Assembly (NCBI GenBank): GCA_964106915.2
Contig: OZ066922.1
Direction: 5' to 3' (one strand)
DNA: 64,000 bases
DNA from: Podarcis gaigeae
Taxonomy: Eukaryota
Position numbers and translations under genes: made by a program. The stretch's first letter is position 1. Each line of letters begins with the position of its first letter. Below the pieces are notes generated by a model, which was given only the letters and a program-made list of their open reading frames with translations, was not told where the DNA came from and did not search any database. Positions 4,195-40,050 of this stretch are shown piece after piece.

Positions 4195-5294
4195 CTAGAA
4201 GAACACAGGAACAAAATAATTAATAGGCATAAAGCAACAATGTTGCCACTAGCAATTAGAATATCAAACCGCAGTAACAATTTGCACAAAGCATTTTGTT
4301 CAATTTGTAGTACAGAACAGTTAACTCTAAAGACGTCTGTGCTCAAATTCACATGCTTCAATAGCTGTCAAATATACGTCTAATGAAATTATTGTGATAT
4401 TGTGCACCAACTGAACACTAGATCAGAAGTGTCATTGGGTGTTTTTCAAAGATTTTTCAAATTGTGAATCTGGTAAGAGTATTAGGAGCATGCATTTTTC
4501 CCATTCTTCCCCTAAAATCTCTTGGAGATGCAGGTATATCATCTAATACTTATCAAAATAATTGGGGAAAAGATTTAGGACATTAGTCACTAAACACTAT
4601 CTGGAATTGGATATGACAAAAATGTCCCTCAACAAAAAATCAGTGTACATTTAAATGAAACTTTTTACAAGTTCATTTTTCATTGGTGCTTAGAGGTCTC
4701 TTGGTGTCTTAAATGGTGAATTCAGCCCTTTAATATTTAGTGAAAGAATTTGCATTGTATTCATTCTGTGGTAGTTGAAATATCTGGGTGCATATTAGCT
4801 AGGATTTTAAACAGATTTCCAATTAAATGTCTCTCCTATCCTGTAAGTTGCAGCTTCTTTTAAACTAATAAATGTAACTGAGATTTCTCTCAAGCATTCA
4901 CTAAACACCAACTCAAAAACTCGGGACCATTCTATTTTTAGATCCTATTCTAAAAGACACCTCAGTCCAAGCTGATCAAAGTTTGTACAAATGTATATAA
5001 TTACACAAGCGTTCTTTTAAGAACACTACTAGGTTTCTCCTCACCATTCCTTCTGGAAGACCCCTACATTTTAAAATAAATAACAGGATATTTTGGAAAG
5101 ATTGGGACAAGAAAGCATTATGCATTATGGGACACAGGTTTGCAGTGCTTTGCTTTTCCTTTAAAGGCAGAGTCACTCAAGTGATGCCTTGTAACAGAAT
5201 CCATGTTCCTAAAATCTGCTCATGAGATAAAAAACATCTACAGCTCTAGAGTAGGCTTTTAATAAATGTAATTACACTGATATGTACTACCTAC

Positions 5295-5520
5295 CCTATA
5301 CTGTACTGATCTGGTTCAATTATGGCTCTTCGGTCAATCCTGCCCACTCCAAGATTAGTCTCCACAATGCTGACGGAGTGCCTCTGTCTCCTGTCATCAT
5401 GTAGTGATACTGGCATGGAGTCAAATGAAGAATTGCTGACAATGCTGGATCTGGAAGAAATTTCACTGTGACCAGAGTCTGAAAAGTTATCCACGGTACC
5501 ACTGGGAGCCAGAGTATAAC
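5295..5520 (-). CDS. RAPGEF2: RAPGEF2 coding exon
   Basis: 226 nt; cag|GTTATACT...ATAGG|gtagg; [25 protein letters not shown]... Confidence 0.95.
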
Positions 5521-6269
5521 CTGTACAGGGAAAAGTGATTATAACCATTTTCATCATAAAATTTTCAGCATTTGTATAAATATTCAAATTATGCAGCCCC
5601 TGTACCAAAATTACTTTTTAAATTGTTGTTGTTTTAAATCTGAGAACAAATAATTTATAAGGGGGTATTTATAGTATCATCTTATTTTTAAGAGAGAATT
5701 TGGGGAGAGAAAACATTAACAGAGGATAATTTAAAGATATAAAAAAAATACTTGCAGTTTCAATATCTAACTAACATGATTCAAATAGGTTCTACACTGT
5801 ATGCCTTTGCCATCCATTGGGATAGAATTTGAATAGAGAAAACCAACCGTATCCCTGGACAAAGCCCACAGCAATCCAATTATAGGAATCTAATTTTGCT
5901 TAAAGTGAAATAAATTTGGGGGATGGGGCGTGCTGCCACACATATGAACAATAGTAAACATGCCTGGTTCCACAGCCAGGATTGATGCATATGGGAAACA
6001 TAAATGTGGTCTCATTTGTAAAGGAAGCTTCATCATAATTCCAAAAAGAAAATACTTTGCATGAAGATTTTTATTCCACACAAATTGTCTTCATCGTGAT
6101 ACCCATATACATTTCTACCCATCCTTGATACTGTGGGAGGCTGCACACATGAATAGTTTCAGCAAATAGGGCTGAACAACTAATATTTAACAACATTATG
6201 GTTCTTGGCACTTGGATATGTGGATCGTTAGGCTACTTTATCTCCTTCCCCAACTGCATCTGGGAAGGC

Positions 6270-6450
6270 AGGAACATAGGTTGTGCTGAGTTAGGCTGCA
6301 GGTTCATTTAGCTCAGTATGCCTACACTCAGTATTGACTTGTACTCAGTATTGACTTGCATCAGGATTTCTGACAAAAAATGCTCTAGCTTGCATACTTA
6401 GAATGTGACAACTTTGTGCTTTTAGAAAATGTCTGCCCATGCTAAACCAC
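6270..6450 (-). mobile_element. Decayed Squam3-like SINE fragment
   Basis: GGAACATAGG...TTTAGCTCAGTATGCCTACACT resembles the reverse complement of the SINE 3' half; boundaries approximate. Confidence 0.4.
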
Positions 6451-6556
6451 AACTGACTACATATTTGGCATCTTAACTAGGTTCAAACAGTTATCACTAA
6501 CAATTACAAGAGAGGAGAACTTGTGAGAGGTGAGGAGTATTTAGACCCTGGCATAC

Positions 6557-6709
6557 TTTTCCTTGGAGAGCTCTGTGGCGAGGTGGGAGGAGAAGATAAC
6601 TGTGAAGACGCATTTGAAATTGTGTCCTCTGCTTGTTTCTTATGACGATCCAAGCTTCCCTCTTCAGAGAGTGAAAGAATTTTCTTTAAAGCTTGTGGAG
6701 AGTTTATGC
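6557..6709 (-). CDS. RAPGEF2: RAPGEF2 coding exon
   Basis: 153 nt; gaag|GCATAAAC...AGGAAAA|gtatgc; [17 protein letters not shown]...SPQSSPRK. Confidence 0.94.
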
Positions 6710-7856
6710 CTTCAATAAAGAAGAAATAACACATCTGATATAAATGCATGCACTTTTTCTTGCATATTCAAATGAGGCCATTCCATGGACCACTGATACT
6801 ACCATTACTATGATATTTTAGCCCACCCTTCTTTTGCAGATCTGAAGGCAGTGTACATTACACGCCCACATTTATTATCACAACCCCCAGTAAGGTTATA
6901 CTCCAGCCACTCTCCACACCAACGTACAATTTATTCTAAGAAAATTATATGCAATTAATAAAAACAAATTTAAACATAACTATTCAGCCCAAGTAAAATG
7001 TTGATTAGACCAATGTTTCTGTTTTACATTCACTTGGAAAATGTGTTTGGTTCTTAGTTCTCAGCCATTCATGGGAAAAAAATTGACTACAGCTAGTATC
7101 CCAGGTTATCTCCTCCCTCAGGCCTGCAACTGAGACAGAAACCTGCAGCTTAAACATGTCTGAAGTGCCATTAAATTTAGAAGGTAAATGGCTACCTCAC
7201 TGTTTCCATGGTGTTATATATATAAAATCTATGTCTTCAAAGTAAGTATAAATGAAAAGTAGAGTTAAAGAAAATATAGACTCAACAGACATTGATCACA
7301 ATATCAGGAACCATGGTTAAAATTGGATAGGTGTAAAAATGTGCAGTGGATGTCATCTGCTTCAGAGTGCTGTCAAGACTGGGCTTGCATTAGCAGACCC
7401 CAACATAGGAAGAAGAGGAAGATTGCTGGGGACTAGAATCAGAGGTGGGAGGGAGGGGCTCTCTAGCAACTGTCAGCTCCCTTAGCACACTACAGTTCCC
7501 AGGATTCTTTGGGGGAGGAATGACTTTTTAAAGTGGGATGATACTGCGTTAAATGCAAACTATAGATGAGACTTTCGTGTGATCTCTAACATTGATTCTG
7601 TTACACTTTTTAACTGAACCTTCCATTTCCAAAACACAACAGTAATAACAATGTATTAGAACCTGTGTTTTCTGCACCTTTGCTTGCAGTTGCTCAAGAT
7701 GCATACCTGTCATTTGTGAAAATACAATCCTAAAACATGTAACTTCCACTAGTAATTTGAAAACATTGTGTGTGTTTTAATGCTCTTGAGAATTTGTTTA
7801 ACCATTATTAACATAAAATTGTTTTTCTACTGAACAGAACAACCCGCAATACTTAC

Positions 7857-8042
7857 CAAAGGGTGGAAGGTCTTTGACTGGTACTTTCTTACGAGAGGGA
7901 TAAAGTGATACAGCAGGGACCTGCAGTGCTTGGTTTGCTTTGTGCTGCTGTTGCTGCTGCACTTTCTGCTGGATCCCTGACCTATGTGCGACTGGGGATG
8001 TTTCAGGTTTTCCAGACCGTTTTTCCCCTGGAGTCTTGGGTA
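7857..8042 (-). CDS. RAPGEF2: RAPGEF2 coding exon (Gln-rich linker)
   Basis: 186 nt, absent from the ORF track; aaag|TACCCAAG...CCCTTTG|gtaagt; [20 protein letters not shown]...[23 protein letters not shown]. Confidence 0.94.
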
Positions 8043-8503
8043 CTTTAAATAAAAAGCAGAATTAAGATTACAGTTAAGACTACCTGAAGAGTACTTGATT
8101 TTATATTAAACGGTGTCCGGAAGAATGATCAGTGATGGAAAAGAGATACCCTCTCTTGGTTGAAAAACCTTGGAATTCTTTAGTCCTCTCATTCAGCTGT
8201 AATATACTACCACAAACTATAGTAAAATGATGCCCTAATCAGCAGTTGGAGAGCCAATTAGGTAATGTATGCCATTTAAGAAACAAGTACCACATATGCC
8301 AACTGTAATATTGTCTACAATTTGCAGTGGCATGGAATAACTTGTTTTCTAGTGATCAGCTTGATTAGAAACACATACTTCTCTCAATGATGCTGTGGCC
8401 AAGCCTAAGCCTGAGGGACAGTTAAGCTGTAGGCTAAATAAAGATAAATTAACAGCTCATTTGCCATGACTGAGGTGCACACCCAACTAAGAAAAATGCT
8501 CAC

Positions 8504-8727
8504 ATGTATTGCTGGCTGGTTCACATTGTAGAGAGAGTGCCTGAAGGCTCTCTTCATCCATTTCCAGATCCAAATTGGAGAGATACTGCTTGACTTTCCG
8601 AGCCATCTGAGCATCTTCATATAGCTTTTTGGCATTGAGGAAGGAGCTGCGGCGGACCCGCTTTTTATGTCCACCTGTTTGTGCAACATCAAGGACTGCT
8701 GCATTTGTACTGCCTTGACTGAGAGAC
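8504..8727 (-). CDS. RAPGEF2: RAPGEF2 coding exon (end of RasGEF region)
   Basis: 224 nt; cag|GTCTCTC...AATACAT|gtgag; [52 protein letters not shown]... Confidence 0.95.
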
Positions 8728-9996
8728 CTGGGGTGAAGAAAGACAAGATGACATGTAACTTAGCTCATCGCTGCATCCTTCAATGACTTGAAACATGCAA
8801 AGGTCTGCATGAATGTCAGTCTATGGTCAAAGCTTACATGCCTCATTCAAGTAAGTCATACAGCTACAATAGGAAAAGGGTAAAAATAAAGAACAACAAT
8901 CAGTTGCAATTGTGAATATGGATTCATTAAAGTCAGCCCCTGAGAATGACTCTGCTCCAAGTATGAAATTCCATGTCATTGGGAAAATGGTTAAACTCTC
9001 TCCCAGTAGCCTTGAGTATTACAAGGACAGAAATATTAAGGCAGGCTCATGCAGCATGGTGTCTCAGACCAGTAAACAGTGGTCAAGCCTCCTGAAACTC
9101 AAAATCCACTACTCTCAAAATCAGGCAGGAAATGTCCACTTTGTACTTTTCAGGTGTCTCTATTAAAACACTTAATTCCATCTGCAATGTGCCAAAAAGT
9201 CTACTGCATTTTCATTTCCCCACTTCCCTCTCCTTAAAAAGGACTTCATGTTAAATAAAAACGTTCAATTAGTTAATGAGGAAGCATGCAAATTTGGATG
9301 TGTTTATGTATGGGAGCTATTTTGCTTCTAATATGTTAACAGCAATAATGAAGGCTGGTTTGTAGAAAGAAAATTTAGTTAGTTGAGCTGTTAAAAATCA
9401 CAACATTGGAATAAAATTTGTGGATTTGGATGGTTCTATTAACTTGTATAAATTTACTGCTTATTTTTATCTGAACCACCATCATGTAACCCCATTTTGG
9501 TATACTCTTCCCATTAAGACTGGTTATTTATGTACATATGTTAGGGATAATGCAAGCTGAGAGGCTAATCTGCATAACAGCCAGCCATTGTGCACATTCA
9601 TCATGACTCATGGAGAATGTGCACCTCAACTGTCCATAAAGATAAAATTGTGCATATTTCCTGGCCGATATGCGTACTCTCAAAAACATGCCTCATTTTT
9701 CTCAGCATCATTTTTTACATTCTTTGAGCAATATGCATGTTATCCTGTCACTAGATATACTCTACAATAGTATGTCCTCTTTTCCATGCTGCTCAGCTGT
9801 TCTGCACAACCAACTGACTCTGGCATCTCTTCTCCACAACCCAGCTGTTTCCCCACTGTTCAGCGATGTTAATGGATACATGGGAGGTGAGTGTATGCAA
9901 ATGGACTGGGAGCTGAGGGGTGTATGTGTTAATTCATTCACACAGACGTTCCCAGTGTCTTTATGCAGGATGGAAAGACAGGTAGAAGTAGAGGGG

Positions 9997-9997
9997 T

Positions 9998-10065
<68 letters not shown>
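9997..10065. repeat. Compound microsatellite (TG)~13(AG)~21
   Basis: Directly visible. Confidence 0.97.
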
Positions 10066-10620: not shown

Positions 10621-10644
10621 CCCAAACTCCTCCACTTCTTCTTC
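10621..10644 (-). CDS. RAPGEF2: RAPGEF2 24-nt microexon (KKKWRSLG)
   Basis: ttgcag|GAAGAAGAAGTGGAGGAGTTTGGG|gtaagt; matches the familiar FRTRKKKWRSLGSLSQG of vertebrate RAPGEF2. Confidence 0.93.
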
Positions 10645-11226
10645 CTGCAAGTGAGAGCCATGAGTATTGAAGCATGGATTTAAGGAAGAGACAGAGAGAT
10701 TATAAGCTCAGAAAGAAAGGATCAGACTTCAGGACAAGCAGTACCAGAAAGCCCAGAACAGCCTTCTCTCAATCAGTCAGCATAATACATTAAATAGGTG
10801 TCTATAGAGTGCCCATAAGATTAAAGCTCATTTCACATTCAACTGAATTCACCTTGGATTACTTACACCTTTAGCGTAAAATAGTGTTCTAAAATCTGGA
10901 GTGAATTTTGTTTCTGTCCTCTTTCTGCTTTTCAGCTTTCACATAATATAATTTCCTTTTAAAACATTTATTCATTCAATATGCATTTCCTATACATTGA
11001 ACCAAAGGGGATATTTTAACTATCCCAACTGATTCAATGCAAACTCTGCTTATATCTATTTTATCTAAGTAAGAATAAGACTAGTGATTAAATATCTATT
11101 ATTTCTCTTGTTCTCCATGACCTTTAAACAATGAACGTAACATAAATTACGCAATGACAGGCAAGAGCCATTTCCATCTGTACTGCCTTTTCCTGATGGG
11201 GGCATTTGATTGGTTGCAACACTTAC

Positions 11227-11232
11227 CCACCC
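11227..11232 (-). CDS. RAPGEF2: Candidate 6-nt microexon (adds two Gly)
   Basis: tgtgcaaattaactgattcacag|GGGTGG|gtaagt; consensus donor, frame-preserving, ~60-nt AG-free zone upstream. Confidence 0.45.
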
Positions 11233-11454
11233 CTGTGAATCAGTTAATTTGCACAACATTATAATTACAGACCAGACAAGAGGGGAAATGTATTACTTGA
11301 ATATTTCTTAAAACTCAAAACTTGCAAAACAATGGCTTCAGTATAGCAAGTGTATGCGTCATAATTATTATAATAGTTTAAGTTATACTATGAGATTTCT
11401 GAAGCATTCTTCAACACTGAACTCTTGAACTGCTTTTCTTGTTAATTGCTTTTT

Positions 11455-11653
11455 GGGGAAAGGTCTGTAGCTCAGTGGTAGATCATCTGCTTTGCATGCA
11501 GAAAGCCCCAGGTCCAATCCTTGGCACTGACAGGCAGGGTTGGGAAGAGAGCCCTGCCTAAAATACTGGACAGCCACTGCTAGTCAGTGTAGGCAGTTCT
11601 AAGCTAGATAGACCAATGGTCTGACTCATACTGAGGCAGCCTCCTATGTGTTC
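11455..11653 (+). mobile_element. tRNA-derived squamate SINE (Squam3-like), near full length
   Basis: A-box-like TAGCTCAGTGG, B-box-like GGTCCAATCC, 3' end CTAGATAGACCAATGGTCTGACTC...GGCAGCCTCCTATG. Confidence 0.85.
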
Positions 11654-12142
11654 ATATGAGTTTAAAAGGAAACATGGTTATCTTATTTAGAACTCACTAT
11701 TGGCACAAAAGCCCAAATAACTTGTAATGCAAGAACAAAATACATATCTAAGATCAAAACAAATCTCATGTATGTTTGTGTTTGAATTCATTTGTGTTAG
11801 CAGTATATTTGTAATAGTAGAATATCCTTCATGAATGCACATATGTAGAAATCAAACAAAACCATTGTAAGAAAAAGTGTTGCGTAGAATGGTGAGGAAG
11901 AATCAAATTCTGGGTAAAAAGCAAGCAGGGTCTACTTGCTATGATTGGGCAATGCTCATTTGTCATGAACTTTAGGAAGCTTGGCGTAGATATCAAGAAG
12001 ACAACACAGATGAAATGTGTTACTCATCTTGCTGAAAAGACAACTGCTTACTTTCAGGCTGATATATAAAGAGAATATCTGATTGCTGTCAAATAACTTG
12101 CAGCTAATTAGCTGGAGAAATAAAGACAATTCTATGTCTTAC

Positions 12143-12151
12143 CCTTGTTCT
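12143..12151 (-). CDS. RAPGEF2: Candidate 9-nt microexon (adds EQG)
   Basis: ggctaatgtttaatgcttgcattcag|AGAACAAGG|gtaaga; CTAAT branch point, two TGC motifs, frame-preserving. Confidence 0.55.
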
Positions 12152-12273: not shown

Positions 12274-12397
12274 CTAGTCCTGAACATTAAAGCAGGATCC
12301 ATGTTAACAGAAGCCATTCGACCCACATGGCGAATCTCTTTTGCGATCATTCGTAATTTCTCAAAATTGACCAAACCTTCCACTTTGGAATCATTTC
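12274..12397 (-). CDS. RAPGEF2: RAPGEF2 coding exon (RasGEF/CDC25 domain)
   Basis: 124 nt; tag|GAAATGAT...ACTAG|gtgag; [40 protein letters not shown]. Confidence 0.97.
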
Positions 12398-14650: not shown

Positions 14651-15622
14651 TCGCCTGCTAGTTGCAAATGGTAATATGTCAAGACCAATGCTATCAATAC
14701 TTGCTGAAAATGCTAATAAATGCAACAAAGCAAAGGTTTCCTTACCAAGGAAGCCTTCAAATACAGTCTAGGGATTGTAATTGCATTCAAAAGCTGAAAA
14801 GCAGGCTCACATGAGGCCTAAACAACAACCAAATGTGCTTCATACAAAGTGACAATCTGTTTTGAAACGACCCTTTCAAAAGGAAGGTAACTGGAAAATT
14901 CAGAAGTGTACTTTTTGTGGGGGTAGGAAGGAGGAGAACCAAAGATTTAAGGCTACCTTGTACCACCAACAGTCTAACAATTAGCTTCTACTGCATTAAG
15001 TTAAAAACCTGTGTAACCTATAACTGGGATTTTGCATCCCAACATGCAAACCTTTTAAATAATACTAAATGAATTGGATTCATAAAGGACTGTGCAGTCT
15101 TTCACACATAAAACATGCTCCATGGTTGCATACTAAGTGGAAACAGAGATAGATAAATGACTTCTTTTGTAATTTTGCTTTTTCCAAGTCTGTTCCAAAG
15201 GATATTTTGATTTCTAGAGATAACAAATGCTTATAAAAATGACAAACACAACAAAGACTAATACATTTATAATGACACACGTGATCATGGAGTAGAGTCT
15301 ACTTTCATCAGATATATCATTATGATGTTAGCAATGACAAGCTTGCAATGCTAATTTAAACAGCTTTTCATGGAAGAATCCTCTAGCCTTTCAACCAGTC
15401 TTGCTCTTTTTGGATTAGGATTTTGTCTAAAGCTGCTGCTGAGGACTGTTAAGTTAATGAAATACGACTATTGTAGTATTGAATTACTAATTCATAAAAC
15501 AGTAAAATGTACACATAGTATTTTTCTTAAAATTTAGTATCATTATAAAGCAGCTATTTACACTTTACTTCTTATAAACTGTATGCAAAATCATTGGGGG
15601 GGGGTGATCTAGTCTTGTTTAC

Positions 15623-16006
15623 CTTATTATTGCAAACATGGAGTTGAAGTTCTTGCATTCCCTGCAGTGCAATGCTATCTTAATGAAGTGCTTAATTATC
15701 TTCATCCTTTTCAGCTGGTTGGTTTCTCGCAGAATCTCAGATGCCACCCAAAAGGTTTCTTGGTTTATTACTTCTTCAAACTTTTTCAAGTTAGTACAGC
15801 TAGACTTAGATTTCAGTTTAAACAAGTCATCTATGTATTCTGTAGGTTCAATGTTACGGAACAGTTCAAAGTTACGCATAGAGAGTTGGGTTGCCACCTC
15901 AACAGTACTGAGTTGCAATAAAGAAATTTGGCTCTCTCTCAGCAATTCCTGAGCATCTTCATCTGAACACAAGGTTTCTGTCTCCATGTTGTTCTTCAGA
16001 TAATAC
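15623..16006 (-). CDS. RAPGEF2: RAPGEF2 coding exon (RA end, RasGEF start)
   Basis: 384 nt; cag|GTATTAT...ATAAG|gtaaa; [19 protein letters not shown]...[14 protein letters not shown]. Confidence 0.97.
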
Positions 16007-39903: not shown

Positions 39904-40050
39904 AAACATAGGAAGCTGCCTTATACCGGCTCAGACCATTAGTCCATCTAGCTCACTACTGTCTATGCTGATTGACAGTGGCTGTCCAGAGTTTCGTACA
40001 GGAGTCTTCCCCAGCCGTATAAGGAATGTCTGGGATTGAACCTAGGATCA
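39904..40050 (-). mobile_element. Squam3-like SINE, 5'-truncated
   Basis: AACATAGGAAGCTGCCTTATACC...GACCATTAGTCCATCTAGCTC...GGGATTGAACC is the reverse complement of the family seen at 11455. Confidence 0.8.

What the first reader, a model, noticed from the sequence alone, without database searches (positions are those of the whole stretch)
10621..12151. Candidate combinatorial microexon cassette (9 + 6 + 24 nt) at the end of the RasGEF domain
Seen: between exons 12274-12397 and 8504-8727 lie three tiny segments, each with a CAG acceptor, a GG|GTAAG donor, length divisible by 3, TGC motif(s) within ~30 nt of the acceptor and a ~40-60 nt AG-free zone. All 8 inclusion combinations stay in frame with no stop (full form FRT-R-EQG-GG-KKKWRSLG-SLSQ). 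Established: short 3n exons with UGC next to the 3' splice site are the SRRM3/SRRM4 neural microexon signature, and KKKWRSLG is part of known RAPGEF2. Inference: the 9- and 6-nt exons, which I do not recognise from annotation, tune the length and charge of a loop beside the Rap-GEF catalytic domain.
Basis: partly seen in the sequence, partly recalled or inferred. Interest (0 to 1): 0.8.

Follow-up and report, generated by a model that had tools for sequence, protein, structure and literature searches.

The report
RAPGEF2 microexon with two unproven neighbours
In a lizard RAPGEF2 gene the 24-base brain-type mini-exon is real and already known, while the 9-base and 6-base candidates beside it have convincing splice signals but no counterpart in any other species I could check, so they remain unproven.

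Summary
The gene is RAPGEF2.

The 24-nt exon (KKKWRSLG) is the known neural microexon. It is conserved with its intron flanks in fish, bird-like sauropsids and a second squamate. Among 215 annotated proteins, 200 include it and 15 skip it. In zebrafish it is published, and its deletion alters behaviour.

The 9-nt and 6-nt segments are statistically unusual. In 128 kb (both strands) only they, the 24-nt exon and one trivial site inside the upstream exon pass a combined microexon filter, where chance predicts about 0.9. But nothing matches them in any other locus fetched:
- **Bird-like and fish loci:** no counterpart.
- **Other squamate:** one contig, which covers only the 6-nt position, and shows nothing there.
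- **Annotated proteins:** no insert other than +24, though no squamate protein was sampled.

A genome-wide scan would produce about one such double coincidence by chance. I put about 0.3 on at least one of the two being spliced and about 0.12 on the full eight-isoform cassette. The same reader also noted the 9-nt and 6-nt segments separately on this window.

The parts
12274..12397 (-). RAPGEF2 coding exon upstream of the cassette; it encodes the end of the catalytic region ([14 protein letters not shown]...MFRT) and ends with the first two bases (AG) of an Arg codon
   Evidence: local tblastn of a turtle RAPGEF2 isoform, 89% identity; 80-84% DNA identity to L001 and L002
12143..12151 (-). 9-nt candidate microexon AGAACAAGG (would add Glu-Gln-Gly), 122 nt after the upstream exon; CAG acceptor, GG|gtaaga donor, CUAAU branch-point-like motif at -21, two TGC within 15 nt, AG-free zone 41 nt. 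Not shown to be spliced
   Evidence: no counterpart in L001, L002, L004, L009, L014-17, L020, L023
11227..11232 (-). 6-nt candidate microexon GGGTGG (would add Gly-Gly); CAG acceptor, GG|gtaagt donor, pyrimidine tract displaced to about -40 to -65, TGC near -20, AG-free zone 61 nt. Not shown to be spliced
   Evidence: no counterpart in bird-like or fish loci, or in the 750 nt upstream of the 24-nt exon in squamate contig L018
10621..10644 (-). Known 24-nt RAPGEF2 microexon encoding KKKWRSL plus the first two bases of the following Gly codon
   Evidence: same exon with at most four base differences in L001, L002, L004, L014, L017, L018, L020, L021, L023; annotated as included or skipped; zebrafish event DreEX0060838, 24 nt (PMC13281805)
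10430..10771 (-). Conserved intron flanks of the 24-nt microexon, about 130 nt upstream (UCUC-rich tract plus UGC) and about 190 nt downstream
   Evidence: 78-83% identity to L001, L014, L018 and L024 while the rest of the intron does not align
8504..8727 (-). Downstream RAPGEF2 coding exon ([14 protein letters not shown]...EPASNT); its first base completes the Gly or Arg codon

Best explanation
The window carries the lizard RAPGEF2 gene on the minus strand. Between the last exon of the catalytic region and the next exon lies the ancient 24-nt microexon (KKKWRSLG). Its architecture is typical of SRRM3/4-dependent microexons: a UCUC-rich tract, UGC motifs, a long AG-free zone and a strong donor. 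It is included in neurons and skipped elsewhere. That part is shown by conservation, annotation and published zebrafish work. The 9-nt and 6-nt segments are most likely splice-site look-alikes (pseudo-exons) that arose in this lizard lineage's fast-changing intron. They are probably not used, or used only at trace level, so the real products are the 0 and +24 forms. This last step is inference from lack of conservation and from the number of such coincidences expected in a genome-wide scan.
For: The 24-nt exon and about 300 nt of flanks are conserved from fish to lizard. Of 215 annotated full-length RAPGEF2 proteins (mammals, birds, crocodilians, turtles, amphibians), 200 carry TRKKKWRSLG, 15 carry TR only, and none carries any other insert. 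In zebrafish the 24-nt event is developmentally regulated, and its deletion causes hyperactivity (PMC12626420, PMC13281805). Neither small segment nor its flanks aligns to any other locus. A relaxed microexon scan of the same intron in 5 bird-like loci, 3 fish loci and the squamate contig L018 returns only the 24-nt exon, apart from the trivial site at the upstream exon's own end. The chance rate of the full signature is about 0.45 per 64 kb.
Against: Within this window the two segments are outliers. They are the only non-exonic sites in 128 kb that pass the combined filter, and both lie in the one 3.5-kb intron that already holds a neural microexon. About 0.025 such sites are expected there. 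They rank 3rd and 4th of 2320 candidates on a threshold-free score. The 6-nt segment has the textbook layout of UCUC, then UGC, then AG (10.1101/2024.09.17.613571). Both keep the frame and the flanking Arg and Gly codons. No squamate contig covered the 9-nt position, no squamate protein isoform was sampled, and no RNA data were seen. Lineage-specific use is therefore not excluded.
Confidence: 0.6

Rival explanations
1. One or both small segments are genuine, lineage-specific (squamate or narrower) neural microexons. SRRM3/4 bound at the UGC motifs would help U2AF and U2 recognise the weak acceptors, and the strong GG|GTAAG donors would recruit U1. Neurons would then add Glu-Gln-Gly and/or Gly-Gly just before KKKWRSLG, about 26 residues after the RasGEF domain.
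For: Full microexon signature at both sites. Strong enrichment within the window. All combinations stay in frame and keep the junction Arg and Gly. The 122-nt intron before the 9-nt segment has a CUAAU branch-point motif at -21. The architecture matches that described for SRRM3/4 targets (10.1101/2024.09.17.613571). Tandem microexons are known elsewhere, for example ptprd meA and meB (PMC12626420).
Against: No conservation in any locus examined, including squamate contig L018 for the 6-nt position. Neural microexons are typically conserved together with their flanks, as the 24-nt exon is here. No annotated isoform carries an extra insert (no squamates sampled). The 9-nt acceptor has a poor pyrimidine tract and a competing gttacag 43 nt upstream. 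No RNA evidence.
Confidence: 0.3
2. The two segments are not coding exons but act as decoy splice-site pairs. They would bind U1 and SRRM3/4 and so adjust how efficiently the neighbouring 24-nt microexon is used.
For: Only circumstantial. Strong donors and UGC-bearing acceptors cluster in the intron just upstream of a regulated microexon.
Against: No conservation. Birds and fish regulate the same exon without them. Nothing here tests the idea.
Confidence: 0.05

Closest known systems
RAPGEF2 24-nt neural microexon (zebrafish VastDB event DreEX0060838)
   Same: Same gene, same position, and the same peptide KKKWRSLG encoded at 10621-10644. The event is alternatively used, developmentally up-regulated, belongs to the srrm3-linked programme, and its deletion gives hyperactive larvae (PMC12626420, PMC13281805).
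   Different: Nothing differs for the 24-nt exon itself. The published event is a single cassette, and no 9-nt or 6-nt partner is described. PMC13281805 says only that rapgef2 'contains several microexons', without placing them.
RAPGEF6 (PDZ-GEF2) exon 21A, 24 nt
   Same: A 24-nt cassette in the paralogue. The paralogue-type proteins retrieved here read QRKKRWKSLG at the equivalent junction. The exon encodes a disordered stretch next to the RasGEF domain, and its inclusion is reported to weaken RAP1 binding (PMC10178952, citing Ellis et al. 2012).
   Different: A different gene, shown to be NOVA2-regulated in endothelium. It too is described as a single cassette.
Tandem microexon sites such as PTPRD meA/meB, and the agrin z site (the agrin example is from my own knowledge)
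   Same: Several tiny in-frame exons in neighbouring positions that combine to give a series of neuronal isoforms. ptprd meA and meB are named in PMC12626420 and PMC13281805.
   Different: Those exons are conserved across vertebrates and seen in transcripts. Here two of the three members lack both kinds of support.
General SRRM3/4 (eMIC) microexon architecture
   Same: Short 3n exon, strong donor, pyrimidine tract and branch point placed far from the AG, and a UGC between them (10.1101/2024.09.17.613571). All three segments fit, the 9-nt one least well.
   Different: This architecture alone does not prove use. That preprint finds a UGC between branch point and AG in 74-79% of true targets, so the motif is neither necessary nor sufficient.

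Membership tests
RAPGEF2 (PDZ-GEF1) gene | Collinear exons matching RAPGEF2 proteins, including the RA and RasGEF domains | tested here: met
   Local tblastn of turtle isoform P0456: 21 collinear matches, residues 177-1606, 82-100% identity, window 41012 to 1076, minus strand. Pfam RasGEF and RA found on the relative P0217.
RAPGEF2 (PDZ-GEF1) gene | Junction peptide of the RAPGEF2 type (FRT-R-KKKWRSLG) rather than the paralogue type (FRQ-R-KKRWKSLG) | tested here: met
   Reading of the exons compared with P0217, P0219 and P0221.
SRRM3/4-dependent neural microexon | Length 3-27 nt, a multiple of 3, open in the gene's frame | tested here: met
   9, 6 and 24 nt with no stop in phase.
SRRM3/4-dependent neural microexon | UGC motif close upstream of the acceptor, long AG-free zone, strong donor | tested here: met
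   TGC counts 2, 1, 2. AG-free zones 41, 61, 60 nt. Donor scores 8.7, 8.8, 10.1 bits on an approximate matrix written from memory.
SRRM3/4-dependent neural microexon | Conservation of the exon and its intron flanks across species | tested here: not met
   Met for the 24-nt exon. Not met for the 9-nt and 6-nt segments in any locus. Squamate coverage is one contig, and only for the 6-nt position.
SRRM3/4-dependent neural microexon | Inclusion seen in neural RNA and dependent on SRRM3/4 | not testable with these tools
For the 24-nt exon, zebrafish data exist in PMC12626420 and PMC13281805.
Combinatorial (tandem) microexon cassette | Two or more adjacent microexons, each found included and skipped in transcripts | not testable with these tools
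   No RNA data. The 215 annotated proteins from other tetrapods show only the 0 and +24 forms.

The most novel reading that the evidence does not exclude
This lizard lineage has recently added two more microexons (9 and 6 nt) beside the ancient 24-nt RAPGEF2 microexon. That would create a three-member cassette able to give up to eight neuronal isoforms differing by Glu-Gln-Gly, Gly-Gly and KKKWRSLG just after the Rap-GEF catalytic domain. It would be a rare example of new microexons being born next to an old one.
Probability: 0.12. Interest if true: 0.55.

Novelty: already known. Interest (0 to 1): 0.3.

Why it matters
The 24-nt RAPGEF2 microexon is one of the few whose deletion alone gives a behavioural phenotype in zebrafish, so its presence in a lizard is expected and adds little. 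If the 9-nt and 6-nt segments were truly spliced, they would show how a lineage can build a graded isoform series at a site that already matters for Rap signalling in neurons. They would also give a natural test of what sequence is sufficient for SRRM3/4-type recognition of exons as short as 6 nt. As it stands, they mainly show that a complete microexon signature can occur without conservation.

Tried and rejected
- **RNA evidence:** Only closed local scripts and alignments with already fetched loci touched it.
- **Transcript fragments:** a word search with the downstream exon peptide returned only ORFs called on genomic contigs, no transcripts.
- **Squamate loci:** anchoring on the downstream exon and on the RasGEF exon gave mostly compact bird-like or fish loci (L001-L017, L020-L024). 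Only L018 (2.2 kb) and L019 (1.1 kb) are close relatives, and neither reaches the 9-nt position.
- **Annotated isoforms:** the region search with whale RAPGEF2 (P0217) listed only the best 120 of 2035 hits, with no squamate among them. A cluster listing added about 100 isoforms from mammals, again without squamates.
- **Zebrafish supplements:** the neighbouring VastDB event numbers I tried were not found, and I did not locate the remaining rapgef2 lines of that table.
- **Naming the taxa of the fetched loci:** tblastn against named proteins was too noisy to use.
- **Repeats:** neither segment lies in a repeat that has another copy in the window.
- **Human DNA:** I avoided fetching DNA for mammal-type ORF clusters so as not to pull human contigs. 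I took no contig for human.

Full report
**What is in the sequence**

The gene runs on the minus strand. Reading 12500 to 8400 and extracting the segments confirms every coordinate in the finding.
- **Upstream exon 12274-12397:** ends in AG followed by gtgagt.
- **9-nt segment 12143-12151:** AGAACAAGG, between ttcag and gtaaga.
- **6-nt segment 11227-11232:** GGGTGG, between cacag and gtaagt.
- **24-nt segment 10621-10644:** between ttgcag and gtaagt.
- **Downstream exon 8504-8727:** follows ccccag.

The upstream exon ends with two bases of a codon. Each small segment is a multiple of three, ends in GG, and has no stop in that phase. Every junction therefore reads Arg (AGA or AGG) on the 5' side and Gly (GGG) on the 3' side, and all eight combinations stay open. 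I checked this by phase arithmetic.

**Identity of the gene**

A local tblastn of a turtle RAPGEF2 isoform (P0456) gives 21 collinear matches. They cover residues 177-1606 at 82-100% identity, from window 41012 down to 1076. The junction peptide FRT-R-KKKWRSLG is the RAPGEF2 form. Paralogue-type proteins read FRQ-R-KKRWKSLG. On the relative P0217 the Pfam RasGEF domain ends at residue 723 and the junction Arg is at about 749.

**The 24-nt exon is real, ancient and known**

The same exon, with at most four base differences, appears in every orthologous locus I could fetch.
- **Bird-like sauropsid contigs:** L001, L002, L004, L014, L017.
- **Fish contigs:** L020, L021, L023.
- **A closer relative of this lizard:** L018.

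These are shown. About 130 nt upstream and 190 nt downstream of the exon are 78-83% identical between the lizard and these species, while the rest of the intron does not align. Among 215 annotated full-length RAPGEF2 proteins (mammals, birds, crocodilians, turtles, amphibians), 200 read TRKKKWRSLG and 15 read TR only. So it is annotated as a cassette. In zebrafish it is VastDB event DreEX0060838 (24 nt). Its inclusion rises during development, it is discussed within the srrm3 programme, and its deletion increases daytime activity (PMC12626420, PMC13281805). The paralogue RAPGEF6 has a 24-nt exon 21A next to its RasGEF domain. That exon is promoted by NOVA2 and is reported to lower RAP1 binding (PMC10178952).

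**Are the 9-nt and 6-nt segments more than chance?**

Within the window, yes.
- **Simple pattern:** CAG-(3n, up to 30)-GTAAG occurs 7 times on the plus strand and 14 times on the minus strand. With GG before the donor it occurs 3 times, all in this intron.
- **Combined filter:** I required a YAG acceptor, 3n length, a donor of at least 8.5 bits, an AG-free zone of at least 40 nt, and at least one TGC in the 40 nt upstream. This leaves four sites in 128 kb: the three segments and a trivial one at the end of the upstream exon. Second-order Markov simulations give 0.445 per 64 kb, or about 0.025 for this 3.5-kb intron.
- **Caveat on thresholds:** the donor matrix was written from memory and the thresholds were chosen after seeing the data.
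- **Threshold-free ranking of 2320 candidates:** the 9-nt and 6-nt segments rank 3rd and 4th with donor plus AG-free zone plus TGC, 7th and 3rd without TGC, and 22nd and 20th on donor alone.
- **Fit to the published layout:** the 6-nt segment has a UCUC-containing pyrimidine tract at about -40 to -65, a UGC near -20, then the AG (10.1101/2024.09.17.613571). The 9-nt segment has a CUAAU branch-point-like motif at -21 and two UGCs. Its pyrimidine tract is poor, and a competing gttacag lies 43 nt upstream.
- **Repeats:** neither segment lies in a repeat with another copy in the window.

**Why I still rate them as probably unused**

*No conservation.* In the bird-like loci the intron between the upstream exon and the 24-nt exon is only 500-750 nt. 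A relaxed scan of five bird-like loci (donor at least 7 bits, AG-free zone at least 25 nt) finds only the 24-nt exon, plus the trivial site at the upstream exon's own end. The same scan finds only the 24-nt exon in three fish loci and in L018. L018 aligns with the lizard over 1.1 kb of the downstream intron at 69%, so it is a fairly close relative. Yet its 750 nt upstream of the 24-nt exon contain nothing like the 6-nt segment. Those 750 nt also do not align with the lizard intron beyond the conserved block next to the 24-nt exon. In the lizard, the 6-nt segment lies 583 nt upstream of that exon.

*No annotated insert.* None of the 215 annotated isoforms has an insert other than +24.

*Look-elsewhere effect.* At about 0.45 chance sites per 64 kb, I estimate on the order of one double coincidence per genome among introns flanking known microexons.

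**Limits**

These points keep the question open.
- No squamate contig reaches the 9-nt position.
- No squamate protein isoform was among those listed.
All later work on it was in closed local scripts, or used places beside it (the downstream exon and the RasGEF exon at 15622-15987).
- I took no fetched contig for human, and I avoided fetching DNA for mammal-type ORF clusters.

**Verdict**

- **Observation:** confirmed.
- **Interpretation:** right for the 24-nt exon, which is already known, and unproven for the 9-nt and 6-nt segments.
- **Probabilities:** about 0.6 that the two are unused look-alikes, about 0.3 that at least one is a genuine lineage-specific microexon, about 0.05 that they act as non-coding decoys, and about 0.12 for the full eight-isoform cassette.
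- **Effect on Rap-GEF activity:** the proposal is inference only. The nearest experimental hint is the reported weaker RAP1 binding of RAPGEF6 when it includes its 24-nt exon (PMC10178952).

Noticed in passing
window 11566-11649 (within about 11480-11660): A SINE-like, tRNA-related element lies in the intron between the 6-nt and 9-nt segments. A second, inverted copy (77% identity over 84 nt) lies at 39906-39989.
   Followed up: partly
window about 9990-10060: A compound (CT)n(CA)n microsatellite of about 80 nt lies in the intron between the 24-nt exon and the downstream exon.
   Followed up: no
L001 8286-8380, L002 1551-1640, L009 6344-6430, L014 12403-12500: All bird-like loci share an alignable block of about 90 nt directly after the upstream exon's donor. 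It looks like a conserved intronic element. The lizard intron shows no similarity to it at that position.
   Followed up: partly
window 5521-6597: Residues 1266-1319 of the turtle isoform P0456 have no tblastn match between the exons at 6597-6710 and 5294-5521. Either an alternative exon of that isoform is missing here or it has diverged.
   Followed up: no
window 6827-6841 (minus strand): A 15-nt exon-like segment ranks 5th or 6th in two of the five window-wide microexon scoring schemes. Its donor is gtgggc and it lies outside the conserved block around the next exon. Probably chance.
   Followed up: partly
window 7857-7877 (minus strand): A CAG-21 nt-GTAAG match encoding KDLPPFG is simply the 3' end of a normal RAPGEF2 exon (7855-8043), not a microexon.
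   Followed up: yes
L018 156-176: In the other squamate contig, a 21-nt open segment bounded by an AAG acceptor and a gtaaga donor lies about 580 nt upstream of the 24-nt exon. Its splice sites are weak and it shows no similarity to the lizard's 6-nt segment.
   Followed up: no
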